Shown: positions 15,771 to 50,415, counted from the first letter of the stretch. The stretch: 64,000 nt of DNA from IMGVR_UViG_3300031857_000002:186001-250000, one strand, 5' to 3'. Notes: a model not told the origin generated them from the letters alone. Translations and numbers: made by a program.

Positions 15771-16412
15771 TTATCTACCCATTACCCAGGGATCATTGAT
15801 AACTGGGGTACCATCTGCCCTGCGCATGAAATTACCACCATGCATATCCCAACGATATCCACGAGCTTTGCCAATTTTCATCAAGTCATCCAGAGTGGCA
15901 ACCATCTGTACCACTCCTTTGGCACCCAGTGCTTTCTCCAGTAGTGCATAATCCCCTTGTCTAAAATTTTTCAAGTATCTCACAAACGCACTCACGCTGA
16001 TACCCTTGTGTTCAATATAACTCCTAGACATCCAGCCTAGATCATCCAAGGCACGTCTCATTGGGCCTTGAGTTTTTTTTAAAGGTTCAGTACGAATCAT
16101 TAGATAGCGATTGTCATTCCACATAAAACTGTCATGACCATAAAACCTTGGCAACAAAGGATTGTCACTGTGCTTGCTACAATAATCGTACCAGGCAAAA
16201 AACATTTTTTGATCAGCACTGAAGTTTTGACGATTGCCTTGAGTGCCAAATACCTTTAGCACCAGGCCAGTACTAGGCTCCAAGTACGCAGTTTGATCCA
16301 CTCCTTTACCCAGGAATTGATAACCCTTGGCTTCTAGCTCAGATCTGATGCCTTTGTCTGTGGTTGAAAATTCTTCTAGATTTTGCTCGTCAATGAACTC
16401 CTGTGCTCTCAT
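15771..16412 (-). CDS. Protein kinase-like fold protein with capsid-targeting-like N-terminus
   Basis: LGKGVDQTAY (Gly loop), VLKV (catalytic Lys), DMHGGNFM (catalytic loop), INDP (DFG equivalent); starts MRAQEFIDE. Confidence 0.7.
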   Translation of the reverse strand: MRAQEFIDEQNLEEFSTTDKGIRSELEAKGYQFLGKGVDQTAYLEPSTGLVLKVFGTQGNRQNFSADQKMFFAWYDYCSKHSDNPLLPRFYGHDSFMWNDNRYLMIRTEPLKKTQGPMRRALDDLGWMSRSYIEHKGISVSAFVRYLKNFRQGDYALLEKALGAKGVVQMVATLDDLMKIGKARGYRWDMHGGNFMRRADGTPVINDPWVMGR

Positions 16413-17032
16413 TTGGCAACACTTTCAAATATTTGTTTTTGTGCTCGATACCATTCCTGCCAGGCTTTTAGTTTTTCTGCGTTTTCGTGGCAGGCGCCGT
16501 AGTTGTCGACGACTGTTTCAAGGAGTTGACTGGCTTTAATGTCGCTGGGGGTTCCATCAACTGACTCGGCACCTCGGGCCACTTCATTACGACTGGCACT
16601 GTCGTGGAGCACGATGCTAGACTTAGGCAAAGAGCACTGGCTATCAAGCTGTGCGCCAGCAACTTCTCTAATGATTTCTCGGTTTGCATATACAGTTTCC
16701 TTTACAACTTTGATCTTGGTAACAAATTTGGTTTCAATTACGGTGTTGACTTCACGACTTCGAGCTTCGGCAATCTGAACTTTTTCTTCTAGTTCTTTGA
16801 TTTTGGCCAGCCATTTTTCTTCATTGCCGCGCCAGCCAAAAAAGTAAGCACCCACGCACAGCAGTAACACACCCACTAGTTCAGCAGGCATGCGGTACTG
16901 CATCATTATAGGAATCCAACGCACCAGCTTAGAAGCAATGTACAACAGCAAGCCTGCCGCAAATATCGCATAGGTCAACATGACAAAAATGCTGTCAGGC
17001 AACAAGCTAAACATCCACACCAACTGGTCCAT
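16409..17032 (-). CDS. i-spanin (Rz-like)
   Basis: N-terminal TMs, coiled coil, C-terminal LHDSAS...VVDNYGACHENAEKL; embedded lipoprotein gene. Confidence 0.75.
   Translation of the reverse strand: MDQLVWMFSLLPDSIFVMLTYAIFAAGLLLYIASKLVRWIPIMMQYRMPAELVGVLLLCVGAYFFGWRGNEEKWLAKIKELEEKVQIAEARSREVNTVIETKFVTKIKVVKETVYANREIIREVAGAQLDSQCSLPKSSIVLHDSASRNEVARGAESVDGTPSDIKASQLLETVVDNYGACHENAEKLKAWQEWYRAQKQIFESVAK
16468..16689 (-). CDS. o-spanin (Rz1-like lipoprotein) embedded in the +1 frame of the i-spanin
   Basis: Lipobox LASC followed by a Pro-rich segment, STTVPVVMKWPEVPSQLMEPP. Confidence 0.7.
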   Translation of the reverse strand: MQTEKSLEKLLAHSLIASALCLSLASCSTTVPVVMKWPEVPSQLMEPPATLKPVNSLKQSSTTTAPATKTQKN

Positions 17033-17084
17033 ATCAGTCCTTTATATAGATGTATTTATTGGATCTGTAGGTTTGATGTAGCAG

Positions 17085-17666
17085 TTAAAAGTCCATGTTA
17101 CATTGAGCTACAAGCTGCCAGTTTTTTAAATATCTGTACGCATCTGACAATCGATTGTGTTCCAGCTGATCCCGCATGAACACACTGAATTCATCAGGAT
17201 CCAAATCAATGTTGATCAGTTGATCAGCGTACCAGTCAACCCCGGTAGTAAAGTAATATTGCCAATGAAAATGCATTACCTTAATAAACACTGTGTTAAG
17301 TCCAAGATTTTCAATATCTTGCTGATGGTGCTGTACGCCGTCCACATTCCAATAACGTGCTAATGCGTCCACTAGATTGCTTTTTATCTTGATGATTTTG
17401 CGGTTGGGATATGTTTTTCTTATCAAATCTGAATTCACAGCGTGAGTATAAGCAATGGGAATACTGTCGTTGATCTCACCGTGATCACTCAGTGTTGGAT
17501 ACCGATATTGATTGGCCGGATTGTGATGTATCAAATGATCATGGCCAATCAATGGAACATTGTGATAATTGCCCTGAAGATTCAGATCAAAAGATTTGCC
17601 CAGCAAATGATGTATAAATCTAAAGCCGCCTGCTCCAGGAAAGTAACTTACAACAACAGGATCCAT
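17085..17666 (-). CDS. Hypothetical, sulfotransferase-like N-terminal loop (PGAGG-F family)
   Basis: VVVSYFPGAGGFRF start, similar to 24470-25357 and 33026-33655. Confidence 0.45.
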   Translation of the reverse strand: MDPVVVSYFPGAGGFRFIHHLLGKSFDLNLQGNYHNVPLIGHDHLIHHNPANQYRYPTLSDHGEINDSIPIAYTHAVNSDLIRKTYPNRKIIKIKSNLVDALARYWNVDGVQHHQQDIENLGLNTVFIKVMHFHWQYYFTTGVDWYADQLINIDLDPDEFSVFMRDQLEHNRLSDAYRYLKNWQLVAQCNMDF

Positions 17667-18724
17667 TAGTATACAAATAAATTCTGGTCACCCCGCTCGG
17701 GAAATAAATCAACTCTACTGTCATTGCGACGTATGTCCAAGGTTAGACAGTGCAGTCCACCGTCCCAGAATGTTCTTGTTCTAAATGGCATGGGGTGTGC
17801 GGTAATGCCATGCTGTTCTAGCGCACGAAATACACCTTCATTTTCCCCTACCATTAGCACGTTCTTTTCATCAATCACAAGACAGTTTAGTTCAAAGTAG
17901 GTTTCTGTGTAGTCGCCTACCCAGTCTTGTGCGTGTTTTATCACATGATCGTTAAATTTTGCCGAATTTGATACTCCGGGCAGCCACCATTTGCCGTTGT
18001 GCCATGGCCCTGTTCTACTGGATTTTTTTTTGTGGCGTAGAAATTCTGGTTGGTTTATGTTTATTTTTTCCCAGCCAGGGAATGTACGATCGTAATCGTC
18101 AAAGTACTCGCTGGTCAGTAATAATCCAGGCTTGAGCACAGCAAAACATCCATCCACATGTCCGCCATTGTTTAACATATGCAACCGATAATCTTTAAAA
18201 GTTTTTTGTATATATTCAACGTCTACATGCTCGTTGTGCCAATAACTGTCTAGGTAAAAGTCGCGACCCACACGTACAGTATTGGCACCGTTGATATGCC
18301 CGGCTCCAGGAATGTTTGGTCGATCAACTATGCGGCTGCCAAGGTCCTTGACATAGTCAGCAACAGCATCAGCCCAGGCTCTGTGATCCCAGGTTGCTCC
18401 AAACAATGTGTTGCCAAACACCAGGAAATGATCACGTGGTGTAATCATGGGCTTGCATAGTTGCCCTGCACTAGTGGGATGACCTTGCGGCATCAAAAAA
18501 TCTTCAATACGATCGTAACGGGGTCTGCGAACTTGCACACCGTGTTCTTCTAGTTTGCGTTGTATTACTGCAAGATCCTCTTGAGTCTTTTGAGTAATTT
18601 CATAAAAGATATCCTGTACTTCTGACTCTAGATGATCATAAAAATGTGCTGGATAACAGTTGCCCAACCATACTTCTTCAAGTCGGCCCCAGTTGGTGAA
18701 ACTGTTTATCTTTGGCAGCGTCAT
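17666..18724 (-). CDS. Amidinotransferase (glycine/inosamine-phosphate amidinotransferase family)
   Basis: NSFTNWGRLEEVWLG, ITPRD, GHVDG, FWDGGLHCLTLDIRR (catalytic Cys). Confidence 0.88.
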   Translation of the reverse strand: MTLPKINSFTNWGRLEEVWLGNCYPAHFYDHLESEVQDIFYEITQKTQEDLAVIQRKLEEHGVQVRRPRYDRIEDFLMPQGHPTSAGQLCKPMITPRDHFLVFGNTLFGATWDHRAWADAVADYVKDLGSRIVDRPNIPGAGHINGANTVRVGRDFYLDSYWHNEHVDVEYIQKTFKDYRLHMLNNGGHVDGCFAVLKPGLLLTSEYFDDYDRTFPGWEKININQPEFLRHKKKSSRTGPWHNGKWWLPGVSNSAKFNDHVIKHAQDWVGDYTETYFELNCLVIDEKNVLMVGENEGVFRALEQHGITAHPMPFRTRTFWDGGLHCLTLDIRRNDSRVDLFPERGDQNLFVY

Positions 18725-19515
18725 TCTAATCCCAGTTCTTTTCTAATAGCAGTGGCCGAAATTGAATGAGTTGCAGAATCAAATGATTCTTGTTCTATCT
18801 TGTAGCCCACGTCTCGACCGTAGGTGATATTTACTATGTTGGGCACAACTTGTATTTCGTATTGACCTTGATATAACATGTCTAGATCTCTACGTATATA
18901 ATTCCTCACCTGTTCTATAGCAAAGGGATTTGATCCTTGCCAGCCTTGACAATCTCTAATTTGAATTACCACTTGACCTGTTTTTGCAATGGCACGTTCA
19001 AACAACTTGCGATGTCCTGCATGCCATGGTTGCCAACGACCTAGCATTTGCACAGTTTCTTTCTGCCAATCGAATACAGGGCGTCTGCGATTATCTAAGA
19101 TATGTGCGGCCACAAACTCGCCCCACTTCTCACCATGCTGTTCAGTGATGCGGAAATCATATTGCTCAGGCGGAACGAATGCTTTATTAGTATCTTCGTA
19201 GCGGCCCTGATCAATGGTGTCAACCCATATGGTCCAGTCTGCTTTGAAATTGTTGCGCATGTCAACCAAGGGAGCCACAAAGTCACAGATCACATAGTCT
19301 ACATCTGTCATTGCATCTGCCAGTTCGCGCATACGTAAACTCTGACGTATACGGCCTGCTTCACTGAAATCCCAGTCGTTGTATTTTTTACGTACATCGT
19401 CGGCATTTAACCAACCCACACGTTTCTTTTCTGCTTGCAAGTGGTCTACAATGTGTTGTGCCAGGTATGTTTTGCCGGCCCCTGGCAGGCCCATGATTAA
19501 AATACGTTGTGTCAT
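18721..19515 (-). CDS. cysC: Adenylylsulfate kinase (CysC-like) fused to a C-terminal HxGH nucleotidyltransferase domain
   Basis: GLPGAGKT P-loop, LNADDVRK, DFSEAGRIRQ, ICDFVAP; then GRWQPWHAGH. Confidence 0.8.
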   Translation of the reverse strand: MTQRILIMGLPGAGKTYLAQHIVDHLQAEKKRVGWLNADDVRKKYNDWDFSEAGRIRQSLRMRELADAMTDVDYVICDFVAPLVDMRNNFKADWTIWVDTIDQGRYEDTNKAFVPPEQYDFRITEQHGEKWGEFVAAHILDNRRRPVFDWQKETVQMLGRWQPWHAGHRKLFERAIAKTGQVVIQIRDCQGWQGSNPFAIEQVRNYIRRDLDMLYQGQYEIQVVPNIVNITYGRDVGYKIEQESFDSATHSISATAIRKELGLE

Positions 19516-19520
19516 GCTAT

Positions 19521-19533
19521 TATTTACTAAGTA
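19521..19533. promoter_or_regulatory. Back-to-back TAAATA (minus) / TAAGTA (plus) late-type promoter pair
   Basis: Sequence CAT-gctat-TATTTA-c-TAAGTA-atttt-ATG; each motif is 5 nt from a divergent start codon. Confidence 0.55.
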
Positions 19534-19538
19534 ATTTT

Positions 19539-20666
19539 ATGAATGTATTAATTTTAACTCCGGACCGCGTTGGCAGCACTTTATTACAACGTGTGATCAC
19601 TGTGTACATGCAATCGCACACTTACAATCGCCCTGTGATTAACTTACACGAACTCACAAACGGATTAATGAAATACTACAGTCCTGTGTTCAATCAAGAA
19701 GTGCTGGGCAAACCAACTGACCGTCCTTGGGGATATTACCAGTCACTCGACGAAATACTGGAGCATTTAAACAGCACAGATCACTACAAGACCGCACGAT
19801 TGGCACATTATCATATTTTAAATCGTCAAGATCCATTGGCTAATCAGGTGCCTTTTTATCAATACCTAAATGATAACTTTTTTATAATCAGCGCCCAAAG
19901 GAAAAATCTACTAGAACATGCACTAAGTTGGTGTATTCAAGGACATTCAAAAAAGTTAAATGTTTACACACATCAAGAAAAGATTGATACATTTGCTGAC
20001 ATATATCAAAATAGAATCACAGTTGATGTGAATGTAATGATAACGTATCTCAACAAGTATGTGAACTACTTGAACTGGGTTGACAATCATTTTACAGTGA
20101 ATTCATACTTTGAATATGAAACACACATGCCTAAAATTGAAGAATATATACTGGGTTTGGATATATTTGGTGGACAACAAAAAAAATCATGGCATGACAC
20201 GTTTGGCATTGAGTTTCAAGACTGGAATCGATATCATTATCTTGCCAGTGACATGAGCGGCATAAGCAAACAGTTACCAAGTCCAGACAACTTAAAAATC
20301 ACGTTTGATTCTCAAGACCAGTTGGACAGTGTAGATCTAGTACCTGTGTTTAATAAAAATGCAATTCATAATAGTCTAAGCATTGGCGACAAACAGTTTT
20401 TAAAACAACATACTAGCAAATACATCAGCAGTTACAAAGCAATTGATGAGTTGGTTCAGCATAAGATAATGGTCACAGGCATTCCCATTAAACTGCAAAC
20501 CATGATGGAAAAAAGCCGACTGATACGCAATTTTGATCAATGCGCAGAAGCATACAATGACTGGGTCAAGCAACGTGGAATAGGCGATCCTTATACCAAT
20601 ACTGATATCAAGAAAATTGCACTAGATGAAATTAGCACCTGGCATTCGATGCCAAGGCTGGAATAA
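19539..20666 (+). CDS. Sulfotransferase-like protein
   Basis: TPDRVGSTLLQR (5'-PSB-like loop) and RKNLLEHALSW (3'-PB-like); start reassigned to MNVLIL. Confidence 0.55.
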   Translation: MNVLILTPDRVGSTLLQRVITVYMQSHTYNRPVINLHELTNGLMKYYSPVFNQEVLGKPTDRPWGYYQSLDEILEHLNSTDHYKTARLAHYHILNRQDPLANQVPFYQYLNDNFFIISAQRKNLLEHALSWCIQGHSKKLNVYTHQEKIDTFADIYQNRITVDVNVMITYLNKYVNYLNWVDNHFTVNSYFEYETHMPKIEEYILGLDIFGGQQKKSWHDTFGIEFQDWNRYHYLASDMSGISKQLPSPDNLKITFDSQDQLDSVDLVPVFNKNAIHNSLSIGDKQFLKQHTSKYISSYKAIDELVQHKIMVTGIPIKLQTMMEKSRLIRNFDQCAEAYNDWVKQRGIGDPYTNTDIKKIALDEISTWHSMPRLE

Positions 20667-21480
20667 TTTCGCATACTAACGCATTGCTAGTAAGAATATC
20701 ATAATGAAATCCATCACGAGCATAATCCAATTGCTCTGTCTGGATCACATTATCAAAATCTAGATTGTCCCCAGCTGGTGCCCAGGACGGAATAGCTGAA
20801 TGTACAATATTTCCCTGTAGTTGTTGCATGCACAATCGAGTATTAATAATGTCCTCGTCAGTGGTAGAATTAATGTGTTCTAACCTTAGTTCTTCACTAG
20901 ATGGGTCGATGCTTGACCAATCATGCAACTGCTTTATTTCTGTCTTTATCCAGGCCGGCAAATTATCAAAATCCTGAATACTTTTACAATCCGGCCAACT
21001 TACATCTTGTACAGATTTATAAAAATTTAAAAATCTTTCATTTAAAATGATGCTTGTGTCAAACTCTCGACGATGCATATAACTCCATTGGACTACTATA
21101 TTAGCCTGAGGAAACTGCGTTAAAATTGCAACTGCAATCCTGGCAATCCAGTTATTACTTGCTCCATCCATGCTGACATTTATTACACGACGCCTTAGGC
21201 GTTGCTGTAGCATATAAGGCCAGGTATGTTCAAGTGGGCTGCCTAGTCCCACAGTAAAACTATCTCCAACGCACCATATCACATCAGACAAATCATCAGG
21301 CCACTCTGCATCTCTAAATCCGCGACTGTTATAATGATATTCAACCTTGTGCGGGTACGACAAAAAATGTTCACGATTCAAGCACAACTCAAGACTATCC
21401 ATGCCTGACTCTAGCCAATGCTGGTTGACTCTTGACGGCAAATATAATTCAGGTAATAGACTTGGTTTTGTTATCGCCAT
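20632..21480 (-). CDS. SGNH/GDSL-like hydrolase-fold protein
   Basis: YNSRGFR, CVGDSFTVG, NVSMDGASN, C-terminal DGFH. Confidence 0.6.
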   Translation of the reverse strand: MAITKPSLLPELYLPSRVNQHWLESGMDSLELCLNREHFLSYPHKVEYHYNSRGFRDAEWPDDLSDVIWCVGDSFTVGLGSPLEHTWPYMLQQRLRRRVINVSMDGASNNWIARIAVAILTQFPQANIVVQWSYMHRREFDTSIILNERFLNFYKSVQDVSWPDCKSIQDFDNLPAWIKTEIKQLHDWSSIDPSSEELRLEHINSTTDEDIINTRLCMQQLQGNIVHSAIPSWAPAGDNLDFDNVIQTEQLDYARDGFHYDILTSNALVCEIIPALASNARC

Positions 21481-21482
21481 TT

Positions 21483-23700: not shown

Positions 23701-23751
23701 AAGACTCCTTTAAATACATTATAAATTCTAAGTTATATATCAAAATTTACT

Positions 23752-25360: not shown

Positions 25361-25708
25361 TCATTTGCCAGCGGCCCGTAAATTAGCGCCGTTGTTGAAG
25401 CTGGGGCTGTAAGGACTGTTGCCCTGTATGTTGCCTTTACGTGCTGACCATTCATAGCCTGCACGATGCCCTGAACAGTCCTTGGTACAGGGCGAGCCCA
25501 GGAAGCTGAGTTCATCCAGCTGTTCTTCCTGTAGCTTGGGACGTATTTCTACTATGGTGGCATTGTGATAGTCAGCCCAGGCACGTGCGGCTGTTTCACT
25601 AGGAAACGTTCTACGCCACTGTTCACGCTGATCTCTGCGGTTGTACGCATACCCCCAGGCTTCTACAGGCGTGCCGGCAATTTCTTCAAACAGCATCAGC
25701 AGTTCCAT
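25361..25708 (-). CDS. Hypothetical, probable internal head protein
   Basis: LQE/LDE sites and CTKDCSGHRAGYEW module. Confidence 0.55.
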   Translation of the reverse strand: MELLMLFEEIAGTPVEAWGYAYNRRDQREQWRRTFPSETAARAWADYHNATIVEIRPKLQEEQLDELSFLGSPCTKDCSGHRAGYEWSARKGNIQGNSPYSPSFNNGANLRAAGK

Positions 25709-27153
25709 TTGCGCAGAGCCAGAGCCTTGCGTGTGGGTTTGCCATTGGGCTTTTTCATTGGACCTTTAACACCGCCCATTCTTGCGCAGAAACTCTTGCG
25801 ACGCTTGGCAGCTTTGGATCCAGGCTTGAGTTTTGAAGGCTTGGTTGTGACTGCTGTTTGTAGTTTAGAACCAGGATTCTCTCTACGATAGCTGGCCACA
25901 CCCTTGGCGTTGAGTCCGCCCTTGGCGCTCTTGCCTTCTTTACGACGCCAGGCTGCTGTTTCGTACAGCATGTGGTCATCCATGGCTTCAAATGTTTCCC
26001 ACACAAGATCAACACTTACGCCTTTCTTTCGAGCCATTTCCTCGGCTAACTGATCCATGGCTTCAAACATCTCATCCACTTCAGGATCTACTTCGTCTGA
26101 TGCTTCCTCTGAGTACATGTAATCCCACACACTAACCAACATTGACTTGGCCACTGCAATCTTTTCTTGACACCATTCAGGCAAGTTATCACCTGAGTTG
26201 ATTAGATCATCCAAGCCGTCAACTGCGCGATCAAGAGTTTCTAGGTTGTTTTCTACCATGCCTGCTTCGTCATCGTACTCGGGATTGTAGTCTTCTGCCA
26301 TGCCTTGTTGACCCGACATATCCATCAGTTGTCGAACATAGAAATTGTAATAACCACGACGGCTGTTGTATTCTCTATCGCCTAGCACAGTCTTTAATGC
26401 AGCCACAGCATCACTTGCTTCTGAACCCTGCATTATTTTTAATGCGTCAGTCACAAGTGAATCAACTCTTTGTGAACTTTCTGTCACACCTTTGTTGTGT
26501 GCTTTCCAGGCTGTGGCATAGGCAATTGATTTTTCTTTATCAGACAACTTGCCATCTTTGGCATAGCCTTTTTTGATATGCTTGACCATGCGTTCTGCTT
26601 TGGCACCTGGAGGTGCGGCTTCGTCTACACCGGCCTTTTTCTTTTTGGCAATGGCAATAGCAGCCTGTTGTGCAGGATTTGCGGCTTCCGCTACACTTTG
26701 CTTGGATTTAATAATATTTCTAATGTCTGTAGCATTTACCCAACGTTTGACTTCACTGCGTGGGTAATATGTCTTTGATCCATTGTTAGACGTAACACCT
26801 TCTAACTTTTTGGGGAAATTACCTATATGCAACACAAGTGTTCGTAATTCATTTGAAGTAATACCTAGTTTTTCTGCAATCTCTTGAAAGCTCCAGGTAG
26901 GCTCTCTCCAGTCTGGGTGTTTCATATTTCCTGGAATATGGATTCCTCTGAGCTCGGGGGTAGAATTAGTACTAGATGTAGATGGGGAATATGTACTATC
27001 AAAACCTTCTTCTACTGACTCAGCAGGCACACAGTTGTTCACACGCACACCACCCTTGACCTTGGTTTTAGGGTTGCCAATCTTTTTGCCTGTCCAACAT
27101 TTGGGATCCAAGCGGACTTTTTCTTCAGAAACAATAAAGTCATTAAATTTCAT
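25696..27153 (-). CDS. Modular probable internal head polyprotein (HTH-like module; C-terminal DUF6321-like module)
   Basis: Starts MKFNDFIVSE; modules bounded by VEE/VAE/VDE/VTE/MAE/LYE; SFQEIAEKLGITSNEL HTH; basic C-terminus RRKSFCARM...ALRKWNC. Confidence 0.65.
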   Translation of the reverse strand: MKFNDFIVSEEKVRLDPKCWTGKKIGNPKTKVKGGVRVNNCVPAESVEEGFDSTYSPSTSSTNSTPELRGIHIPGNMKHPDWREPTWSFQEIAEKLGITSNELRTLVLHIGNFPKKLEGVTSNNGSKTYYPRSEVKRWVNATDIRNIIKSKQSVAEAANPAQQAAIAIAKKKKAGVDEAAPPGAKAERMVKHIKKGYAKDGKLSDKEKSIAYATAWKAHNKGVTESSQRVDSLVTDALKIMQGSEASDAVAALKTVLGDREYNSRRGYYNFYVRQLMDMSGQQGMAEDYNPEYDDEAGMVENNLETLDRAVDGLDDLINSGDNLPEWCQEKIAVAKSMLVSVWDYMYSEEASDEVDPEVDEMFEAMDQLAEEMARKKGVSVDLVWETFEAMDDHMLYETAAWRRKEGKSAKGGLNAKGVASYRRENPGSKLQTAVTTKPSKLKPGSKAAKRRKSFCARMGGVKGPMKKPNGKPTRKALALRKWNC

Positions 27154-27671
27154 TATCTTGCCTTTTTGGGTTGTTGTGCAGGTTGCACAGCATGCGGTAC
27201 ATTTTTGTACACACGTCGAGCAGGATCGTACACAGTCCGTAACGGACCGGCTCCTGCTAGTTTTTTCATACGTGACAAGGCAGCATCAAATGCATCAGCA
27301 TCCATGTTGCCTACTTTTTCCTTGGACTCGTCAAACCAGTCGTCAGATTCATCGTCAGTCATGTCATCTGCTGGGTCTGAATCCGTCATGTCATCGGCAT
27401 CGCGATCATTGTAGTAGTCCCAGTCACTGTCGTAGTTTTGTGGATCGGGTGCAATGGGTGGTCGAGCGTCTTCTGGCATCATGCCGTGAGTTTTAACATG
27501 TGTATCTAGGTCATCACGCTGTTTAGACAGTTGTTGAATCAGTTGTTTGTTGCCAGTTTGTATTGCTTGTCTAAGTTTTTCTTGAATAGCATCTGCTTGA
27601 TCATGATAGTCATTCATTCGCATTGGCCCAGGAACTTTGACATCTTCGTCTATAATGTGATTGATTTTCAT
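27153..27671 (-). CDS. Probable internal head protein
   Basis: Starts MKINHIIDE; acidic middle; LSRMKKLAG motif. Confidence 0.6.
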   Translation of the reverse strand: MKINHIIDEDVKVPGPMRMNDYHDQADAIQEKLRQAIQTGNKQLIQQLSKQRDDLDTHVKTHGMMPEDARPPIAPDPQNYDSDWDYYNDRDADDMTDSDPADDMTDDESDDWFDESKEKVGNMDADAFDAALSRMKKLAGAGPLRTVYDPARRVYKNVPHAVQPAQQPKKAR

Positions 27672-29008
27672 TGTGGTAGTCCTGCTAGTTCACGCATGCG
27701 GCGTAGTTGTTGTGATTCATATGTACCAGTTCTAATTGCATCACCTTTTTGTTGAGCAGTGGCCTGACGCAGTTGATCTCTAGTGCGTCGAGCTTGGTCC
27801 AAGTCACTTACATTGGCAGGTAACGGAGGTTCTTCTTCAGCATCCACTGCACTCAGCTTGGTTGGTATGGGACTATCTGTCTTGGGCGGTGCAGGCTCAC
27901 CAAACAAGTCTGCCTGACTTTGATCCACATCAGGTTCAACAGGTTCCCCAAACTTGGCAGGCAATTCCGTGTCCTGTTGTGACACAGGCGGATTTGTAAG
28001 TGGTTGTGCCACAGGCGGATTTGTGAGTTGCTGTGTCATTTGACTCATGGCAGCACTTGTGCTAGGTTTGTCAAGTATGTCTATCGTGGGCATGGGTGCT
28101 GGTGCAGGTTTGACCATGGGTACGGTGGCGCCTAATGGTTTAAATGTACTGGAACCTGACTTGAGCTTTGCTGGCTCAGGGGCAGGTTTGCGCTGTTCAG
28201 CATCTGCGGCACGTTGTTGAGTCTTTTCTGCACGACCAGTTGATCCAACAGTTCCACTGCCATAACTTCTGGTATCTGTATCTGTGTCAGATTTTTTACT
28301 GCTGTCTGAGTCTTTCTTACGCTCAGGCTCTGCGCCTGTTTGACGATGCATGGCATCAAGCTCTCGACTGAGCTTGTCTAGTTCATCACTTAGGGCGTCG
28401 TTTTCGTCATCCAAGCTGCCTATCTTTTTGCTCTGCTGACGGTTAACATCACGCATTTGCACATCAATGTCGTCTTGGCGTTGATTGATTTTTGCTTGTG
28501 CTTGTAGTTCTTGCCCTGTGTTTTTTTGCACATCCATGTCGTACATGAGCAAGGCCTCCATGTCGCTCTGTGCCTGTGGGTACTTGGCATAGGCCTGACG
28601 TAGTGCTGTGCTCAATGCGGCACTGCGCACCGATCCACGGTCTAGATCAGAGTTTTTTTTAGAATCGCGTTCTAACAAGTTGGGCTGTTGTGCTGTGCCT
28701 GTTCTGCGACCTAGTTTTTGTAGCAATGAGTTAAACTTGTCCCCACGACTCATGACATCGTACACAAATGCATAACGATCCTGGTCTGCAGGCAAGGTAT
28801 CATAGTAGTTGGCCACTGCTTCAATATCAGCATCATCTAGTTCAATCACTTGATTGTTGCCAAAGTCCAACTGTAGGTTTCTGCTGAGTCTTGGGCGTTT
28901 GTTTACATAGGCTCTGTGTAGCAGGGCAAAGTTGCCTGTGCCCATGGCTCTACTGCCTGGTGGCCCAAACCCAAATTCCATCAGAGTGACAACGTCTGTT
29001 ATTTTCAT
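27668..29008 (-). CDS. Probable internal head/core protein, coiled-coil and low-complexity
   Basis: Starts MKITDVVTLME; ends LRRMRELAGLPQ; TAAATA 7 nt upstream. Confidence 0.6.
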   Translation of the reverse strand: MKITDVVTLMEFGFGPPGSRAMGTGNFALLHRAYVNKRPRLSRNLQLDFGNNQVIELDDADIEAVANYYDTLPADQDRYAFVYDVMSRGDKFNSLLQKLGRRTGTAQQPNLLERDSKKNSDLDRGSVRSAALSTALRQAYAKYPQAQSDMEALLMYDMDVQKNTGQELQAQAKINQRQDDIDVQMRDVNRQQSKKIGSLDDENDALSDELDKLSRELDAMHRQTGAEPERKKDSDSSKKSDTDTDTRSYGSGTVGSTGRAEKTQQRAADAEQRKPAPEPAKLKSGSSTFKPLGATVPMVKPAPAPMPTIDILDKPSTSAAMSQMTQQLTNPPVAQPLTNPPVSQQDTELPAKFGEPVEPDVDQSQADLFGEPAPPKTDSPIPTKLSAVDAEEEPPLPANVSDLDQARRTRDQLRQATAQQKGDAIRTGTYESQQLRRMRELAGLPQ

Positions 29009-29018
29009 GATATGTTAT

Positions 29019-29456
29019 TTATTTGCTTTTAATTCCAGCCAGTTGACTTAGTCTTGCAAGCTCTTGATCAGTTAAGGGTTTGTCTAGCTTGGGAACTTTT
29101 GGCTTGACATTGGTGGGATAGTATGCTGACTTTGCACGATTTTTTGTGCCTAGAATCTGCTGTGCTGGCACTCGAACGCCTTCGTCTAGATTCAATTCAC
29201 TGTGCGGGAAAGCAATATAACTGTTGCCATTTTCGTCACCTGTGCGTATTACAAACACACCTGCATCGTCGTCACCAGACTCGTCTTGACCTATTTCCCA
29301 GCCCATTGCGGCCAGGGTTTGTTGTGCTCGGGCCATTTGTTGTTCTGTGCCATTCCACCATTGTGCAGCCAACTGCCGTAGAATGTGTTCTTCGTCAGGC
29401 TCACGATCGTCGCCACCAGGTGGGGCAAATTCTTTTAAAATTTGGTCAATATTCAT
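29019..29456 (-). CDS. Probable internal head protein
   Basis: Starts MNIDQILKE; ends ELARLSQLAGIKSK. Confidence 0.6.
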   Translation of the reverse strand: MNIDQILKEFAPPGGDDREPDEEHILRQLAAQWWNGTEQQMARAQQTLAAMGWEIGQDESGDDDAGVFVIRTGDENGNSYIAFPHSELNLDEGVRVPAQQILGTKNRAKSAYYPTNVKPKVPKLDKPLTDQELARLSQLAGIKSK

Positions 29457-29995
29457 TATCGTATCCCCGCTGCCGACTGCAGAGCCAAAGTTTCGGGTGT
29501 GGGCTTGTGAACTTTCTTAGGCTCAATGCCTGCGGCTGTGCGTACTGAATTTAGATCATCTTCGTGAGTGGCACGATAATCAGCTGGGGTTAACGGCACA
29601 GTTTCGGTCATGGCTTCCACTGACCAAGGCTGTGTCTTGCCGTCATAACGCATGGTCCAGTCTTTGGCATCAAACTCTGTGAGTGTGCCTAGGTCTTCAA
29701 TCAGTGTGCCTACCTGCTTGGCCACATTGGGTCTGCGACGCAGTTCTGCGTACACTAGATATCGACTGGGTTTGATTTCGCCCGGGCTACGGTCCGCGTC
29801 CAGCACAAAATCATAGCCCTTTTCAAACCATGAAACTAGATCTTTTGCTGCCTGTAGATCACGCACAAAAAAGCTCACTACCACAATGTCATCATCGTCG
29901 CCCATTTTTGATGCAAATTCATCAATATGAACGGTGCTTTTCATTATGCCTTCTAGGTCTTTGTACTGTAGGCCTTCTAACAAGTGTCTAAACAT
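29456..29995 (-). CDS. Hypothetical phage protein
   Basis: Starts MFRHLLE; ends with two AAGI motifs. Confidence 0.6.
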   Translation of the reverse strand: MFRHLLEGLQYKDLEGIMKSTVHIDEFASKMGDDDDIVVVSFFVRDLQAAKDLVSWFEKGYDFVLDADRSPGEIKPSRYLVYAELRRRPNVAKQVGTLIEDLGTLTEFDAKDWTMRYDGKTQPWSVEAMTETVPLTPADYRATHEDDLNSVRTAAGIEPKKVHKPTPETLALQSAAGIR

Positions 29996-30594
29996 TATAC
30001 TACTCCTGGTGCTGGTGCTTGTGGCTGGCCGGGCACAGCAGCCAAGTCTTGTTGTGCGTTTTCTGCCTTGGCATCGCTTTGCGTTTCTTGTTTGTCAAGA
30101 TCCTGCTCATAGGCATTGTCCAATTCTTCTAGATCAATGTCTTGATCTTCCATTTCGATTGATCCTGTTTTGATGTCGCTCATTAGGCTTTTGGGCATAA
30201 CAATCTCCACCAGCCACACAGGCTTTTTCACAATCTTGGCCTTGTGTGTGCCAGGAATATAATCCGACGGATCTGTAATCTTTATTGGGATTTTCATTTC
30301 TACTCTGCGATAATTAACTTCGCAATCAAATGGCAATAATCTTTTTCCGCCTCTGGGATCAGGCATGAGTTTTTCGGGCCACATAAATGTACAGCCCACA
30401 CGATATTTTGTTATTTCTGGACCGGCAACCAATTCACCAATCTCCCAGTTTTTAAATGCGTAGATGTCTACTTCGTCCAGCACACGCTCAAAGTCCAACA
30501 GCGTGGTGATTGAACCATCGCTCATGTAGATATCGCGGATGTTGTCGGCTACTTGCCAGTAGTCTGAGTGGTCTTTAAAGAGTTCTTTGTCCAT
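29995..30594 (-). CDS. Hypothetical phage protein
   Basis: 199-aa ORF with acidic tail; TAAATA 7 nt upstream. Confidence 0.65.
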   Translation of the reverse strand: MDKELFKDHSDYWQVADNIRDIYMSDGSITTLLDFERVLDEVDIYAFKNWEIGELVAGPEITKYRVGCTFMWPEKLMPDPRGGKRLLPFDCEVNYRRVEMKIPIKITDPSDYIPGTHKAKIVKKPVWLVEIVMPKSLMSDIKTGSIEMEDQDIDLEELDNAYEQDLDKQETQSDAKAENAQQDLAAVPGQPQAPAPGVV

Positions 30595-30758
30595 GGTTGT
30601 ATATTTAGCACAACGGGACTCAAGGTGTATTTTGCTTTCACGTTCAACAAAGCCTAATACTTATACCAATAATCCACGGAAATCTGTCCACATATCTTGA
30701 AATTTCTACACCCGTAAATAACAGGTCCGAGAGGACTAACCCCATAGGAGAATTACAC

Positions 30759-44167: not shown

Positions 44168-44177
44168 GGTTTAAAAA

Positions 44178-46790: not shown

Positions 46791-46808
46791 AATCTAATCC
46801 TGTTGGAG

Positions 46809-46859
46809 TATTTACCAAAAACTTTGTACCTGGCTACACAGTTTGGTTTGTGCTAAATA
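46809..46859. promoter_or_regulatory. Divergent TAAATA late-type promoters for two fibre genes
   Basis: TATTTA 46809-46814 (18 nt from the 46790 start, AGGA RBS) and TAAATA 46854-46859 (19 nt from the 46879 start, GGAG RBS). Confidence 0.6.
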
Positions 46860-46878
46860 TGAACAGTTGGAGTGATCA

Positions 46879-49557
46879 ATGTCATATATTATCAATAATA
46901 GTCGTGGAAACATCGTAGCAGTAATACCTGATGGTTCAGTAAACACCAGTACAAGTTTGACCCTGATTGGGCAAGGTGTAACCAATTACGGTACTGACCA
47001 AAATGAAAACTTGGTATATTTACTGGAAAACTTTGCTAGTCCTACTGCACCTAGCACACCTATTTTAGGGCAATTATGGTACAATTCTAGTTCAGATTCC
47101 CTGTACTCATATAGCAGTGCAAATGTCTGGGTGGTGTTGGCCAATGACACTTATGTGCAAGCTCAAAAGGTTAGTCCGGTATTTACTGGTATACCCACAG
47201 CACCCACAGCCACATCAGGCACAGCCAACACACAGATTGCTACCACAGCCTTTGTAACCAACAGCCCTGCGCTAAGTGGCGTGCCTACAGCACCCACAGC
47301 AGCCAATGGCACTAGCACCACGCAGATTGCTACCACTGCTTTTGTAAGAAATGCCACTCTTGGACTAGGCACAATGAGCCAACAAAATGCCAGTGCAGTC
47401 ACAATCACTGGTGGCACCATTACCGGGCTGAGTTCTGCACTACCTGTAGCAAGCGGAGGCACTGGAGGCAATACTGCTGCCACAGCAAGAACAAATCTTG
47501 GATTAGGCGACATTGCTACACAAAACGCCAATGCAGTAGCATTCACTAGCGGGACTATTAGTGGACTGACTTCATTGGCAGTTGCTAATACCACATCTGG
47601 GCCTGTGGTTAGTACCAGCGGGGTGTTGTCTGCTATAGCGGCGCTGCCAGTAAATCAAGGTGGAACTGGTGCAACCGATGCTGCCACAGCAAGAACTAAT
47701 CTAGGACTAGGGTCAGGTGCCACTGCTAATGTAGGTACTATTGCCACTCAAGACGCCAATGCAGTCACAATCACTGGTGGAACCATAACTGGACTCTCGT
47801 CAGCGTTGCCTGTAGCATCGGGCGGTACTGGGGGCAACACTGCCGCTACCGCAAGATCGGCACTGTCAGCAGCCGCTTCAGGCAACAACTCTGATATCAC
47901 ACAGATTTCAGGATTGACCACCGCACTGAGCCCAGTGTTTGGTGGCACAGGACAAACAACATTCACAGCAGGCGCAGTACTATTGGGTGCTGGCAATGGA
48001 CCGATTGCCACAGTAGCACCAGGCACATCAGGCAACATTCTTCGCAGTAATGGATCAGCTTGGGTAAGTGAAAACGTACCCGACGGCGGAGGCACAGTGA
48101 CCAGCGTGGCACTTGCAGGAGGTACAGGCATCAGTGTTAGTGGTAGTCCTATTCTAAGTTCAGGCACTATCACTGTGACCAACACAGGTATTACATCTAT
48201 TACAGGCCCCACAGATGGTCCACAAACTGGCGCTATTACATTTACCGGTTCAGGCGTGACCAAAAATGGAAACGTTTATACATTCAGTAGCATAGGTGCT
48301 ACTGGACCACAAGGGCCTGCCGGTCCTGCCGGTACTAACGGCACAAATGGTACCAATGGTACCAATGGTATCAACGGAGCAACAGGTCCTGCTGGCCCAC
48401 AAGGCCCACAAGGTATTCAAGGCACCCCCGGGGCTGGCGGCGATGTATATCTAGCTAACAATCAGGTGTTTACTGGTACTAATGGATTCAGTGCAACCGT
48501 TACGCTATCTAATGTTGTCCGAGTAAACAACGACAACACAGGTGGTGCTGCCAATTCAGGTTTTATAAATTTTGGCAACCCTGGAGGTTGGACCGTGGGC
48601 AAGAGCGTGTATTCAGGTGTTACTGCTTTGGCCTTGCGAGCAGGTACTTCGGGCGCATTATATATTTCTGGCACTCAAACAGATTTGATCACTAACCGAT
48701 TTATTTGTTCGGGATTAGGAGGATTCAGCTCGTCTACAGAATCTGCCTTGTACGGATCATGTTCTTCATTAGGTGCCGCTGGTGCCATTGGTTTATACAC
48801 TCTGGCCACGCCGGGACTGGGCATTGGTGTACGTGGCGAAGGAACTTCATCAGGGTTTGGAGGAGATCTATTACAAGCTGTCACTGCAAGAAGTTCAAGC
48901 ACAGCATTTGACTTTATTGAAGGTTGGGCAGCTGATGCGTCCGTTTGGAAAGTTACAGGACAAGGAAAATTTATTACTGCCTACTCTGGCGCTGACTATG
49001 CTGAATACTTTGAGAGCGCCACAGGTGTTGCGTTAGAAGTAGGTGCCACTGTGGTTTTAGATAACGGGCTAGTTCGTGTTGCTACTGATACTGATGCTGT
49101 AGGAGATATCATTGGTGTAGTTCGTCCCAAAGAAGAAGGCAGAACCACTGCCATGATTGGCAATGAATCTGAACTGCATTGGAATCAACGCTGGATCACT
49201 GATGACTTTGGTAGATTTATCAAAGATACACACGAAATCATTGAATGGCAAACAGTAGATGACACAGGGCAAACTAAGTATCACTCTTATGAAAGTCATG
49301 CTATACCTGCTGATATAGTGATACCCAATCATGCGGTACGTCAATCGCACGACACAGACGGTAATGCCTATCATCACTATCGTGAAAATCCTTCATACGA
49401 TGCTGATGCGACGTATGTACCACGCAGTCAGCGTGATGAGTGGGTGATTGTTGGTATGGTAGGACAGGTTCCTGTACTAAAGGGCCAACCTGTAAATCCT
49501 TCCTGGCGCAAGATGAAAGCGATCAGTTCCGCAGTTGAACTGTGGTTTATACGCTAA
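46879..49557 (+). CDS. Long tail fibre with collagen-like segment and C-terminal Peptidase_G2-like chaperone domain
   Basis: PTAPTA...TQIATTAFV repeats, [14 protein letters not shown] repeats, GxY collagen, ADYAEYFES and [12 protein letters not shown]. Confidence 0.8.
48295..48436 (+). repeat. Collagen-like Gly-X-Y and GTN tandem repeats
   Basis: [46 protein letters not shown]. Confidence 0.85.
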
Positions 49558-49867
49558 AACTTGAACCACATCCGCAAGTGGTTTGAGCTTGCGGATTATT
49601 GATTACAAAACTAGATCCCATATCTGAATCGTTATATTTGATCTCTGCGTTTTGTAAGTATTGCATGCTCATGGCATCCACTAACACTGTGACATCTTCA
49701 TAAACAAAATCAAAGTCGTCTTCGTTCTTTGTTTCTTCCAATGTAAATCCATATTGCATACCTGAGCAACCTCCACCTTGCACAAACACACGGAGTTTGG
49801 CATTGGGGTTGTTCTCTTCTGCTAAGATGTCTCTTAACTTGGTAACTGCGCTTGTGTCTAATTTCAT
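49547..49867 (-). CDS. erpA: A-type Fe-S cluster carrier (ErpA/IscA family)
   Basis: [17 protein letters not shown] and CGCGSSF. Confidence 0.9.
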
Positions 49868-50415
49868 TATAGTCTTTCGTTGCAAACGTCCCAGTCAATG
49901 ATCTTCCAGATATTGTCTAGGTAACGTTCTTTGTCTGCTTGGTAATCCAAGGCCCAGGCGTGTTCCCACCAGTCCACTAACACACAGATGTCTGTGCGAA
50001 CAGCATGGTTAGCAATGGTTTTAATGTCACCACCAGTGCTCAAATAAACCCAACCAGATCCTTGAATCTTCATTGCGGCTTGTTTGAATTCTTCTTTGAA
50101 ATCTTCCCAGGTTTCAAAGTGTTCTTCTATCAGCGCAAGTACTGCACCTCGGGGCCGGTTGGCGCCTTTGGGAGGCCTAAGCTGAGGGAAAAACTTGTTG
50201 TGTAAAAAACTGCCAGCACGATTAAAATCCGCATTGCCTTCTCCTGCATTGTAGCGTTTGGCATAGCCTTTGGCCAAATGCTCAAAATGATAGTCTATAG
50301 TTTCCTTGCTCATTATGGGTTCAAGGTCTTTGATACCATAAGGTAAAGGCGTGGTTTCCAGTTTTGCCGGACGGGTGCTTGCTTCTACAAGATTGATGTG
50401 GTCGCGTAGTTCCAT
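49867..50415 (-). CDS. sod: Fe/Mn superoxide dismutase with capsid-targeting-like N-terminal extension
   Basis: LPY...LEP.MS.ETIDYH, LHNKFF, GSGWVYL, DWWEHA (four metal ligands); starts [11 protein letters not shown]. Confidence 0.88.

What the first reader, a model, noticed from the sequence alone, without database searches (positions are those of the whole stretch)
15771..50415. Family of genes with T4 capsid-targeting-like N-termini, including enzymes
Seen: MRAQEFIDE (kinase, 16412), MKFNDFIVSE (27153), MKINHIIDE (27671), MKITDVVTLME (29008), MNIDQILKE (29456), MFRHLLE (29995), MELLMLFEE (25708) and [11 protein letters not shown] (SOD, 50415) all start with a short, roughly 7-11-residue hydrophobic leader ending in hydrophobic-x-Glu. 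Knowledge: T4 internal proteins IPII/IPIII carry the CTS MKTYQEFIAE, which targets them to the prohead and is removed by gp21. Inference: this phage uses a transferable address tag to load unrelated enzymes into the head, forming a cargo system that acts before phage gene expression.
Basis: partly seen in the sequence, partly recalled or inferred. Interest (0 to 1): 0.75.

Follow-up and report, generated by a model that had tools for sequence, protein, structure and literature searches.

The report
T4-like capsid address tag on cargo
An uncultured 320-kb freshwater jumbo phage related to T4 puts a nine-residue, T4-like "capsid address" (MRAQEFIxE and variants) in front of many unrelated proteins, including a kinase, an acetyltransferase and a superoxide dismutase. 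This most likely sends them into the phage head to be injected with the DNA.

Summary
All eight N-termini are real ORF starts at the stated coordinates. A sharper core, M-[RK]-x-x-[ED]-[FIL]-[IVL]-x-E, occurs on 8 genes against about 0.3 expected. It is found only at true N-termini, on bodies that mostly share no BLASTP similarity, and with differing codons.

The genome encodes a T4 gp23-type capsid protein and a gp21-type prohead protease. Its scaffold has the proteome's highest density of [LI]-x-E. The tag keeps the residues that matter in T4's MKTYQEFIAE (F, I, E).

A back-translated MRAQEFIxE pattern hits 114 IMG/VR contigs. The 45 largest, the ones checked, are pieces of about 350-kb relatives. 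At least 20 BLAST-unrelated body families carry the tag.

Homologues of the kinase-fold and GNAT-family proteins keep the tag whatever domain follows. The SOD keeps a variable leader ending in an invariant [LIVF]-x-E before its fold. The closest relative has five tagged genes in a row.

Verdict: this is a T4-type capsid-targeting and processing leader with an enlarged enzyme cargo, a new member of a known kind. Packaging, cleavage and ejection are inferred, because no virion proteome exists for this clade.

The parts
15771..16412 (-). 213-aa protein-kinase-like protein with the canonical leader MRAQEFIDE (leader codons 16386-16412).
   Evidence: ORF confirmed. 106 of 118 homologues start M[RK]xx[ED][FILV]. 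AF2 model pLDDT 90.5, with residues 1-13 disordered. All Foldseek hits are protein-kinase-like folds. Invariant K53, D189, N194 and D207.
16409..17032 (-). 207-aa predicted membrane protein, first gene of the unit that holds the kinase. No leader.
   Evidence: Its stop overlaps the kinase start. A late-like motif lies upstream.
17053..17059 (-). T4-late-promoter-like motif ATAAATA, 20 nt upstream of the 207-aa gene.
25361..25708 (-). 115-aa protein starting MELLMLFEE. It is a short version of a leader-bearing dCMP/cytidine-deaminase protein found in the closest relative.
   Evidence: Start conserved in L246 as MELLMLVDE, 220 aa, dCMP_cyt_deam_1. At this junction a relative's contig reads MRASEFVSE.
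25696..27153 (-). 485-aa basic protein, leader MKFNDFIVSE, with a C-terminal DUF6321 domain.
   Evidence: Pfam DUF6321, 5e-21. Relatives of the same body family start MRAQEFITE, MKIHEIISE or MKIKDFQTE.
27153..27671 (-). 172-aa protein, leader MKINHIIDE. C-terminal region carries ...MKKLAGAG.
   Evidence: Strict motif. The syntenic 402-aa gene in L246 starts MKINQIIHE. C-terminal motif.
27668..29008 (-). 446-aa protein, leader MKITDVVTLME. Ends ...MRELAGLPQ.
   Evidence: The L246 orthologue (62% identical) starts MKINDVVTLME. A late-like motif lies 7 nt before the ATG. C-terminal motif.
29016..29022 (-). T4-late-promoter-like motif ATAAATA ahead of the 446-aa gene.
29019..29456 (-). 145-aa protein, leader MNIDQILKE. 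Ends ...SQLAGIKSK.
   Evidence: Strict motif. It corresponds to the C-terminal part of a 397-aa L246 protein that itself starts MKITDVIKE and has ...TLKE before the same FAP... sequence.
29456..29995 (-). 179-aa protein starting MFRHLLE. Homologue of proteins annotated as virion structural. Weakest leader.
   Evidence: phrog_13138 'virion structural protein'. PA5oct-group homologues. The N-terminus differs in the G020 and G003 orthologues.
29995..30594 (-). 199-aa virion-protein homologue without a leader. First gene of the unit.
   Evidence: phrog_12928 'virion structural protein', 8e-27. Its likely PA5oct counterpart, inferred from position only, is EST35_0295, which is marked ESI-MS/MS.
30602..30608 (-). 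T4-late-promoter-like motif CTAAATA ahead of the 199-aa gene.
49867..50415 (-). 182-aa Fe/Mn superoxide dismutase with a 17-residue N-terminal extension. Putative leader [11 protein letters not shown].
   Evidence: Sod_Fe_C and Sod_Fe_N above cut-off. Aligns to solved SODs only from residue 21, with the metal-ligand H, H, D, H kept. In 77 orthologues the N-terminus varies but [LIVF]-x-E before ASTRPAKLE... is invariant. The G003 orthologue starts MSYSFIKQFITE.
50420..50426 (-). T4-late-promoter-like motif ATAAATA, 4 nt before the SOD start codon.

Best explanation
The window belongs to a 320-kb uncultured freshwater jumbo phage that builds its head the T4 way. It has a gp23-type capsid protein, a gp20-type portal, a scaffold and a gp21-type serine prohead protease.

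A set of late-expressed genes carries a short N-terminal leader with consensus M-R-A-Q-E-F-I-x-E. A second flavour is M-K-I-x-[DEQH]-[IFV]-[IV]-x-E, and looser variants occur on the SOD and the deaminase-family protein.

By analogy with T4's capsid targeting sequence MKTYQEFIAE, the proposed mechanism is:
1. The leader binds the assembling scaffold core, so the protein is enclosed in the prohead (inferred).
2. The prohead protease then cuts after the Glu of [LIV]-x-E and frees the mature protein inside the head (inferred).
3. The protein leaves with the DNA at infection (inferred).

The cargo in this genome includes a minimal protein-kinase-like enzyme, a probable GNAT-family acetyltransferase with a basic tail, an Fe/Mn SOD, a DUF6321 protein and several small proteins.

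Shown here: the tag, its N-terminal exclusivity, its modular attachment to unrelated bodies, its conservation at peptide but not codon level, the protease, and the shared [LI]-x-E logic.
For: - Head machinery: Gp23 family match 8e-98 and Peptidase_S77 9e-24 in the same genome. The protease aligns to T4 gp21 (PDB 5JBL, 4e-12) and has His and Ser where that chain has Ala.
- T4 leaders read from AF158101: IPII and IPIII MKTYQEFIAE, IPI ...STITE, Alt MELITELFDE. T4 genetics places targeting at residues 4 and 7 and processing at residues 8 and 10 (PMC9026906). F, I and E at the matching places are the most conserved leader positions here.
- Enrichment: 8 strict leaders against about 0.3 expected, none at 1731 internal Met. 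The two complete relatives have 9 and 11.
- Independence of bodies: direct BLASTP finds no similarity among the carriers, though family clustering later linked the 121-aa and 127-aa proteins. Codons differ between leaders.
- Spread: 114 IMG/VR contigs match a roughly 39-bit back-translated pattern. 101 of 115 matches sit at the first start codon of an ORF. There are 28 BLAST-separated body groups, of which about 20 are carried by sequences found independently of my own regex. All 45 of the largest contigs checked are fragments of about 350-kb genomes, and all five that are at least 90% complete encode the protease.
- Modularity: in the GNAT family (3693 homologues) the leader stays at the extreme N-terminus whether GNAT, NUDIX, nucleotidyltransferase or PF22028 follows.
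- Kinase: leader residues 1-13 are disordered and lie outside a confident fold.
- SOD: the extension is absent from cellular SODs, and the site is invariant in 77 orthologues.
- Protease logic: the scaffold has 15 [LI]-x-E in 364 aa, the highest density in the proteome (mean 0.88 per 100 aa). The capsid protein has four such sites in its first 42 residues.
- Synteny: five consecutive tagged genes in the closest relative.
- Timing: 13 of 15 tagged or head-core genes lie in units behind a T4-late-like TAAATA motif, against 42% of all genes (p = 4e-4).
- Only experimental anchor: the head-module small protein of PA5oct (EST35_0150) starts MKINDIITE and is recorded as found in virions by ESI-MS/MS. 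It is homologous to this genome's 72-aa gene beside the portal.
Against: - There is no direct evidence that any tagged protein of this clade is in a virion or is cleaved.
- The cargo proteins tested (the 121-aa protein, the kinase and the GNAT-family protein) have no usable homologues in sequenced isolates: two gave no match and the kinase one weak partial match.
- The complex prediction of protease with the kinase N-terminus gave no answer.
- The nearest isolate, PA5oct, has only one strict leader in the first 150 kb, so heavy use of the tag is not general in the wider group.
- The late-promoter argument rests on a motif resemblance, and 42% of genes qualify.
- The SOD and MFRHLLE leaders score poorly against the canonical profile (p = 0.014 and worse).
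- What T4's CTS binds is itself not fully known.
Confidence: 0.75

Rival explanations
1. The leader is only a protease-removable propeptide, for example one that keeps enzymes inactive until head maturation, or a domain-boundary cleavage site. Entry into the head would depend on something else, such as C-terminal motifs or basic DUF6321-type tails that bind DNA or the capsid shell.
For: - Three proteins of the window's operon end in a motif like the scaffold's conserved C-terminus ...RLAGL.
- The GNAT-family and DUF6321 proteins have very basic C-terminal tails.
- In a G020 polyvalent-like protein, a leader-like ...INE junction lies just after the kinase domain, ahead of sequence resembling leader-body junctions of stand-alone proteins.
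Against: - The conserved positions include those needed for targeting in T4 (the Phe), not only the cleavage residues.
- The C-terminal motif is absent from MRAQEFI-type cargo.
- A bare cleavage site would not need to be at the extreme N-terminus with a fixed length.
Confidence: 0.12
2. The N-terminal peptide has another job unrelated to the head. It could be a degron, a signal for localisation in the infected cell, a handle for a chaperone or translocase, or a translation-initiation feature of late mRNAs.
For: - Many late genes here have almost no 5' untranslated region, so the first codons could matter for initiation.
- Relatives encode ClpA-type and other AAA+ proteins.
Against: - Codons vary freely while the peptide is kept.
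- Most late genes, including tail and capsid genes, lack the peptide.
- The peptide ends in the same [LI]-x-E that is packed into the scaffold.
- It mirrors T4's CTS.
Confidence: 0.08
3. The resemblance is chance or compositional. Hydrophobic-x-Glu near an N-terminus is common, and the list is a selection artefact.
For: The loose rule fits 13% of genes, and 26 of the 43 matches are expected by chance. MFRHLLE and the SOD leader are not significant on their own.
Against: - The strict motif is 20- to 30-fold enriched and never internal.
- 114 contigs match a roughly 39-bit pattern.
- The leader is kept in 106 of 118 and 99 of 120 homologues of two unrelated families.
Confidence: 0.03

Closest known systems
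[quoted passage not shown]
   Same: - A 9-10-residue N-terminal tag on unrelated small proteins.
- Nearly the same core (QEFIxE), ending in [LI]-x-E.
- A gp21-family protease and a gp23-type capsid in the genome.
- Bodies vary between relatives while the tag is kept.
   Different: - One residue shorter.
- Two flavours coexist (MRAQEFIxE and MKIxxIIxE).
- Used on at least 20 body families across the clade, many of them enzymes and multidomain proteins rather than small basic proteins.
- The phage is a 320-350-kb jumbo phage only 65% identical in capsid protein to its nearest isolates, and far from Tevenvirinae.
- Function is untested.
T4 Alt (ADP-ribosyltransferase packaged in the head and injected)
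   Same: An enzyme cargo with a short N-terminal propeptide (MELITE...) cut by gp21. The SOD and deaminase-family leaders here also start MEL...
   Different: The enzyme classes differ: kinase fold, GNAT, SOD, NUDIX, deaminase. No ADP-ribosyltransferase was seen among the tagged proteins examined.
Propeptide processing of head and ejection proteins in phiKZ, 201phi2-1 and SPN3US
   Same: Jumbo phages that load many proteins into the head and trim them after Glu with a gp21-related protease.
   Different: Those phages use a different motif before the Glu, with longer, non-uniform propeptides. No uniform transferable 9-residue N-terminal tag is described in the review read here (PMC9026906).
Polyvalent proteins of phages (Iyer et al. 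2017; PMC7824862)
   Same: The same domain repertoire (GNAT, NUDIX, nucleotidyltransferase, ParB-like, amidoligase, kinase) is proposed to be injected with the DNA. A 1864-aa polyvalent-like protein lies next to a tagged gene, and the kinase domain sits inside such a protein in G020.
   Different: Here the domains are mostly separate small proteins, each with its own address tag, rather than one giant chain.
T7 gp0.7 protein kinase
   Same: A phage protein-kinase-like enzyme that acts on host proteins. There is a weak PHROG match (phrog_15752, 7e-4).
   Different: gp0.7 is made early from the entering genome and is not packaged. This 213-aa protein is minimal, sits in a late-type unit and carries the tag.

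Membership tests
T4-type CTS / gp21 capsid-targeting system | The genome encodes a gp21-family (Peptidase_S77) prohead protease beside a scaffold and a gp23-type capsid protein. | tested here: met
   Head module order: portal, 72 aa, 280 aa acidic, protease, scaffold, capsid.
T4-type CTS / gp21 capsid-targeting system | The tag is at the extreme N-terminus, about 10 residues long. | tested here: met
   8 of 8 strict matches in called genes are at the first start codon, with none at 1731 internal Met. 101 of 115 in IMG/VR.
T4-type CTS / gp21 capsid-targeting system | The tag ends in the protease's site, hydrophobic (L/I) at P3 and Glu at P1, and the same site is used in scaffold and capsid precursors. 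| tested here: met
   Leader logo. The scaffold has the highest [LI]-x-E density of the proteome, and the capsid N-terminus has four sites. Actual cleavage was not observed.
T4-type CTS / gp21 capsid-targeting system | Sequence likeness to T4's CTS at the residues shown by genetics to matter (4 and 7 for targeting, 8 and 10 for processing). | tested here: met
   T4 MKTYQEFIAE against MRAQEFIxE (PMC9026906). F, I and E are kept. T4's Tyr4 corresponds to Ala here.
T4-type CTS / gp21 capsid-targeting system | The same tag sits on proteins unrelated to each other (transferable). | tested here: met
T4-type CTS / gp21 capsid-targeting system | Tagged proteins are present in mature heads with the tag removed. 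| not testable with these tools
   No isolate or virion proteome exists for the clade. The only anchor is PA5oct EST35_0150, which starts MKINDIITE and is recorded as ESI-MS/MS-detected.
T4-type CTS / gp21 capsid-targeting system | The tag is sufficient to package a foreign protein. | not testable with these tools
   Needs a bench experiment.
T4-type CTS / gp21 capsid-targeting system | Cargo genes are expressed late, together with the prohead. | tested here: inconclusive
   13 of 15 lie behind a TAAATA motif like T4's late promoter, against 42% of all genes. Timing was not measured. Metatranscriptome contigs cover parts of the operon but could be DNA carry-over.
Protein-kinase-like superfamily (213-aa protein) | Bilobal kinase fold with a Gly-rich loop, an ATP-binding Lys, a catalytic Asp/Asn loop and a metal-binding Asp. 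| tested here: met
   AF2 pLDDT 90.5. All top Foldseek hits are kinases or aminoglycoside/choline-type kinases at probability 1.0, though TM is only about 0.4. Invariant G35/G37, K53, D189, N194, D207. No Pfam match. Activity and substrate are untested.
Fe/Mn superoxide dismutase (182-aa protein) | Both SOD domains and the four metal ligands (His, His, Asp, His). | tested here: met
   Sod_Fe_C 79 bits and Sod_Fe_N 30.8 bits, both above cut-off. The alignment to 1UES keeps H43, the HN His, and the D and H of DWWEH. The N-terminal hairpin is shortened.
GNAT acetyltransferase (203-aa protein, genome 183749-184360) | Match to the GNAT family above threshold. | tested here: inconclusive
   Acetyltransf_1 scores 16.8 bits, below the 20.7 cut-off. 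Its Atlas cluster scores 0.97, with 48% of members carrying Acetyltransf_1. Close homologues carry PF00583/PF13508 and are named GNAT by JGI.

The most novel reading that the evidence does not exclude
The tag may define a very large, sequence-readable 'injected proteome' of an uncultured jumbo-phage clade, with thousands of tagged enzymes: kinase, GNAT, NUDIX, nucleotidyltransferase, deaminase, SOD.

Part of this cargo may use a second address. The proteins of the window's MKI-type operon end in a copy of the scaffold's conserved C-terminal ...R-L-A-G-L motif. They could therefore dock on the shell or portal like a scaffold, while the N-terminal leader handles core binding and release.

A packaged SOD would then protect the entering genome, or change the host's redox state, from the first second of infection.
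Probability: 0.25. Interest if true: 0.75.

Novelty: new member of a known kind. Interest (0 to 1): 0.6.

Why it matters
If the tag works as in T4, the proteins that these uncultured 350-kb phages carry into the cell can be listed from sequence alone. That would turn "what do jumbo phages inject?" into a testable catalogue of candidate take-over and counter-defence enzymes.

It would also show that the T4 capsid-targeting code is conserved, almost letter for letter, across a very deep split in the T4 superfamily. That is useful for phage engineering, because protein delivery by tagged cargo might transfer between distant phages.

A head-packaged SOD or kinase would be a new kind of pre-made effector.

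Tried and rejected
- **Protease-leader complex:** the prediction of the protease with kinase residues 1-30 returned 'no answer'. It is not used either way.
- **Isolates carrying the cargo:** no match for the 121-aa and GNAT-family proteins, and one weak partial match for the kinase. megablast of the operon found nothing.
- **PA5oct as a proteomic test bed:** only one strict leader in its first 150 kb, and none with the EFI pattern in the whole record. I did not fetch the remaining 137 kb.
- **Atlas search for the 446-aa protein:** no informative neighbour.
- **Generalising the C-terminal ...LAG motif:** not found in MRAQEFI-type cargo or in the kinase and GNAT families. It is kept only as a side observation.
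- **Internal leader-like sites in the 1864-aa polyvalent-like protein:** only three modest sites, which is not convincing.
- **Metatranscriptome contigs:** fragments of the operon or close relatives are present in four RNA libraries. Direction, timing and DNA carry-over cannot be resolved.
- **A canonical-leader profile as the sole classifier:** it ranks the SOD only 17th (p = 0.014). The SOD's case rests on orthologue conservation instead.
- **Per-gene virion versus non-virion annotation of the whole genome:** The late-motif units served as a proxy.

Full report
**Where the window lies.** The window is bases 186001-250000 of a 320,175-bp IMG/VR virus record, estimated 92% complete. The genome encodes a T4 gp23-family major capsid protein (Pfam Gp23, 8e-98) and a gp21-family prohead serine protease (Peptidase_S77, 9e-24). 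The protease aligns to the solved T4 gp21 (5JBL, 4e-12) and has His and Ser at the two columns where that crystallised chain has Ala. The head module reads portal, 72-aa protein, acidic 280-aa protein, protease, 364-aa scaffold, capsid protein. By capsid protein, the nearest isolates are Pseudomonas phage PA5oct (Arenbergviridae), Vibrio phage 2.275.O and Xanthomonas phage XaC1, at 61-66% identity. No isolate matches at the DNA level.

**Checking the observation.** All eight quoted N-termini are the starts of minus-strand ORFs at the quoted coordinates. I called genes on the whole genome with a codon-model caller of my own (348 genes, 91% coding).

Shuffling residues 2-12 gives 26.2 +/- 4.5, with a maximum of 41 in 500 shuffles. 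Internal windows match at 7.8%. The loose rule is therefore enriched about 1.6-fold, but most single matches could be chance.

A sharper pattern, ^M[RKN]x(1-3)[EDQNH][FILV][ILVM]x(1-2)E, also matches T4's own CTS. It fits 8 genes against 0.26-0.42 expected, and none of 1731 internal Met positions. In a six-frame scan, 8 of the 10 matches are the first start codon of called genes of at least 119 aa. The other two lie in 21-22-codon spurious frames.

The carriers (genome coordinates):
- 320-703, MRAREFITE
- 703-1068, MRAQEFITE
- 183749-184360, MRAQEFITE
- 201771-202412, MRAQEFIDE (the window's kinase)
- 311030-311389, MRFREFITE
- The window's MKFNDFIVSE, MKINHIIDE and MNIDQILKE genes

A 72-aa protein (182280-182498, MRFKEIME...) is a near miss. 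Direct BLASTP finds no similarity between the bodies, although later clustering through relatives linked the 121-aa and 127-aa proteins as one family. The leaders use different synonymous codons, so the constraint is on the peptide and not on the DNA or mRNA.

**Comparison with T4, from sequence rather than memory.** From GenBank AF158101:
- IPII and IPIII start MKTYQEFIAE.
- IPI starts MKTFKEF... and reaches ...STITE at residue 19.
- Alt starts MELITELFDE.

A review of L. Black's work (PMC9026906) states three things. The first 10 residues of IPIII suffice for packaging. Targeting depends mainly on residues 4 and 7, and processing on residues 8 and 10. Foreign proteins fused to the CTS are packaged and delivered.

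Aligned from the Glu, MRAQEFIxE keeps T4's Q5-E6-F7-I8-x-E10. In 143 distinct leaders from two protein families, the most conserved positions are E5, F6 (or L/I), I7 (or V/L) and E9.

**Spread in nature.** The back-translated pattern for MRAQEFI-x-E carries about 39 bits, so one chance match is expected per roughly 7e11 positions (my estimate). It hits 114 IMG/VR contigs. 101 of the 115 matches are at the first start codon of an ORF.

CheckV completeness of the 45 largest contigs scales as fragments of about 350-kb genomes. All five records that are at least 90% complete encode Peptidase_S77.

I fetched two complete relatives, G020 (352,754 bp) and G003 (372,016 bp). They have 9 and 11 strict leaders against about 0.3 expected. 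G003 mostly uses the flavour MKIxE[IL][IL]xE. Its kinase-family protein starts MKIEELLSE and its SOD starts MSYSFIKQFITE.

After removing the leader, the carriers fall into 28 BLAST-separated groups. Some of these are singletons picked by my own regex, so I count about 20 as safe.

**The enzymes.**

*Kinase.* The 213-aa protein has 118 homologues, of which 106 begin M[RK]xx[ED][FILV]. A 37-sequence alignment shows an invariant Gly-rich loop, K53, D189, N194 and D207. The AlphaFold2 model has pLDDT 90.5, with only residues 1-13 disordered. Every top Foldseek hit in the PDB and in Swiss-Prot models is a protein kinase or a related small-molecule kinase. Probability is 1.0 and E about 1e-5, but TM is only about 0.4, which fits a minimal 200-residue kinase. 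In G020 the same domain lies inside a 1087-aa protein.

*SOD.* Both Pfam SOD domains pass their cut-offs. The alignment to solved SODs begins at residue 21, and the four metal ligands are kept. In 77 orthologues from the clade, the first 8-15 residues vary in length and sequence ([44 protein letters not shown] and others). The [LIVF]-x-E immediately before ASTRPAKLE... never varies.

*GNAT family.* The 203-aa MRAQEFITE protein belongs to a family of 3693 database proteins. Pfam's GNAT model falls just below cut-off on this copy. Close homologues carry PF00583/PF13508, and its Atlas cluster scores 0.97. The listed homologues combine this module with NUDIX, nucleotidyltransferase, PF22028 or DUF6321 domains. 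The leader sits at the extreme N-terminus of 99 of 120, whichever domain comes first.

**The window's operon.** Two late-like motifs head the block at 30594-25361:
- 199-aa virion-protein homologue, no leader
- 179 aa, MFRHLLE
- 145 aa, MNIDQILKE
- second motif
- 446 aa, MKITDVVTLME
- 172 aa, MKINHIIDE
- 485 aa, MKFNDFIVSE, with DUF6321
- 115 aa, MELLMLFEE

These rest.

In the closest relative (L246, 62% identical in the 446-aa protein) the syntenic genes are 397, 430, 402, 467 and 220 aa. They start MKITDVIKE, MKINDVVTLME, MKINQIIHE, MKIKDFQTE and MELLMLVDE. That is five leaders in a row, on bodies that differ greatly in length from those in the window. The 220-aa protein is a dCMP/cytidine deaminase, and the window's 115-aa gene is a short version without that domain.

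The weakest member is MFRHLLE. Its G020 and G003 orthologues have other N-termini, although an L-x-E lies at the same place in G020.

**Is [LI]-x-E the protease's site here?** This is indirect. The scaffold has 15 such motifs in 364 aa, the highest density in the proteome (mean 0.88 per 100 aa). The protease ranks fifth. The capsid protein has four sites in its first 42 residues, ahead of the stretch that aligns with the N-terminus of mature T4 gp23*. T4's scaffold gp22 is likewise cut into small pieces (PMC9026906).

**Timing.** A motif NTAAATA, like T4's late promoter TATAAATA (from my own knowledge), occurs 157 times in the genome. 76 copies lie within 60 nt upstream of a start, including the portal, tail and fibre genes. 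13 of 15 tagged or head-core genes lie in units behind it, against 42% of all genes (p = 4e-4). This fits late synthesis but does not measure it.

**Experimental anchor.** The only one I found is in PA5oct. EST35_0150, the 73-aa gene after the portal, starts MKINDIITE and is annotated as detected in virions by ESI-MS/MS. It is homologous to this genome's 72-aa gene beside the portal, which starts MLLTE.... The papers on PA5oct and phAPEC6, and a jumbo-phage comparative review, do not mention a capsid-targeting tag in this group.

**Conclusion.** The best explanation is a T4-type capsid-targeting and processing leader used on an unusually broad, enzyme-rich cargo in an uncultured clade of T4-related jumbo phages. 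Packaging, cleavage, ejection and early action are inferences from T4. They need virion N-terminomics, an in vitro cleavage assay or a fusion test. I file it as a new member of a known kind, with interest 0.6.

Noticed in passing
window 29016-29022, 30602-30608, 50420-50426, and genome-wide: The T4-late-like motif NTAAATA often ends only 4-7 nt before the ATG, with no Shine-Dalgarno sequence. Many late mRNAs of this phage would therefore be leaderless or nearly so.
   Followed up: partly
genome C1:42002-43096 (scaffold); window 27153-27671, 27668-29008, 29019-29456: The scaffold ends ...IDLKRLAGL. The same C-terminal RLAG[LI] is kept in G020, G003 and PA5oct. Three cargo-operon proteins, and their L246 counterparts, end with ...ELAGL...QLAGI or ...KLAGAG. 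This may be a second, scaffold-like address. It is not present in MRAQEFI-type cargo.
   Followed up: partly
genome C1:182280-182498, and 16 IMG/VR loci such as L009 and L016: A 64-72-aa family consists of a leader followed by NASVGATSSGS.... This closely resembles capsid-protein residues 43-58 (NASAGSTSSGNIATL), just after an L-K-E site and next to the region that aligns with the mature N-terminus of T4 gp23*. It looks like a free-standing copy of the capsid protein's N-arm.
   Followed up: no
genome C1:184357-189951 (L005:4357-9951): A 1864-aa protein has nucleotidyltransferase, amidoligase, DUF6886 and ParB-like nuclease matches, two of them below the Pfam cut-off. It is polyvalent-protein-like, lies behind a late-like motif, and is followed directly by the MRAQEFITE GNAT-family gene. 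Its G020 homologue (1087 aa) contains the kinase domain.
   Followed up: partly
L246:4790-5998 and L246:5998-7401: Two tagged proteins of the closest relative carry a twin-arginine-signal-like segment (SRRGFL... followed by an Ala/Gly-rich stretch) in the middle of the chain, at about residues 110-205. No such segment is found in the window's genome.
   Followed up: partly
window 25698 (relatives' contigs in run X17): A loose end of metatranscriptome contigs, read on the minus strand, gives ATG AGA GCC AGT GAA TTT GTT TCT GAA, which is MRASEFVSE. In some relatives the gene after the DUF6321 gene therefore starts with a canonical leader where this genome has MELLMLFEE.
   Followed up: no
genome C1:38171-39319 (L004:2171-3319): A TPR plus glycosyltransferase-9 (heptosyltransferase-like) protein lies beside the capsid gene. 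It starts MDINQIIEQ and sits behind a late-like motif. It is leader-like but has Asp at position 2, and Glu at 8 followed by Gln.
   Followed up: no
window 13651-15120: Two adjacent paralogous genes of 248 and 239 aa start MAIIVGPGISVGAGITI... and MPIVIGAGVQVGGGITI..., a glycine-rich repeat-like N-terminus. Not examined.
   Followed up: no
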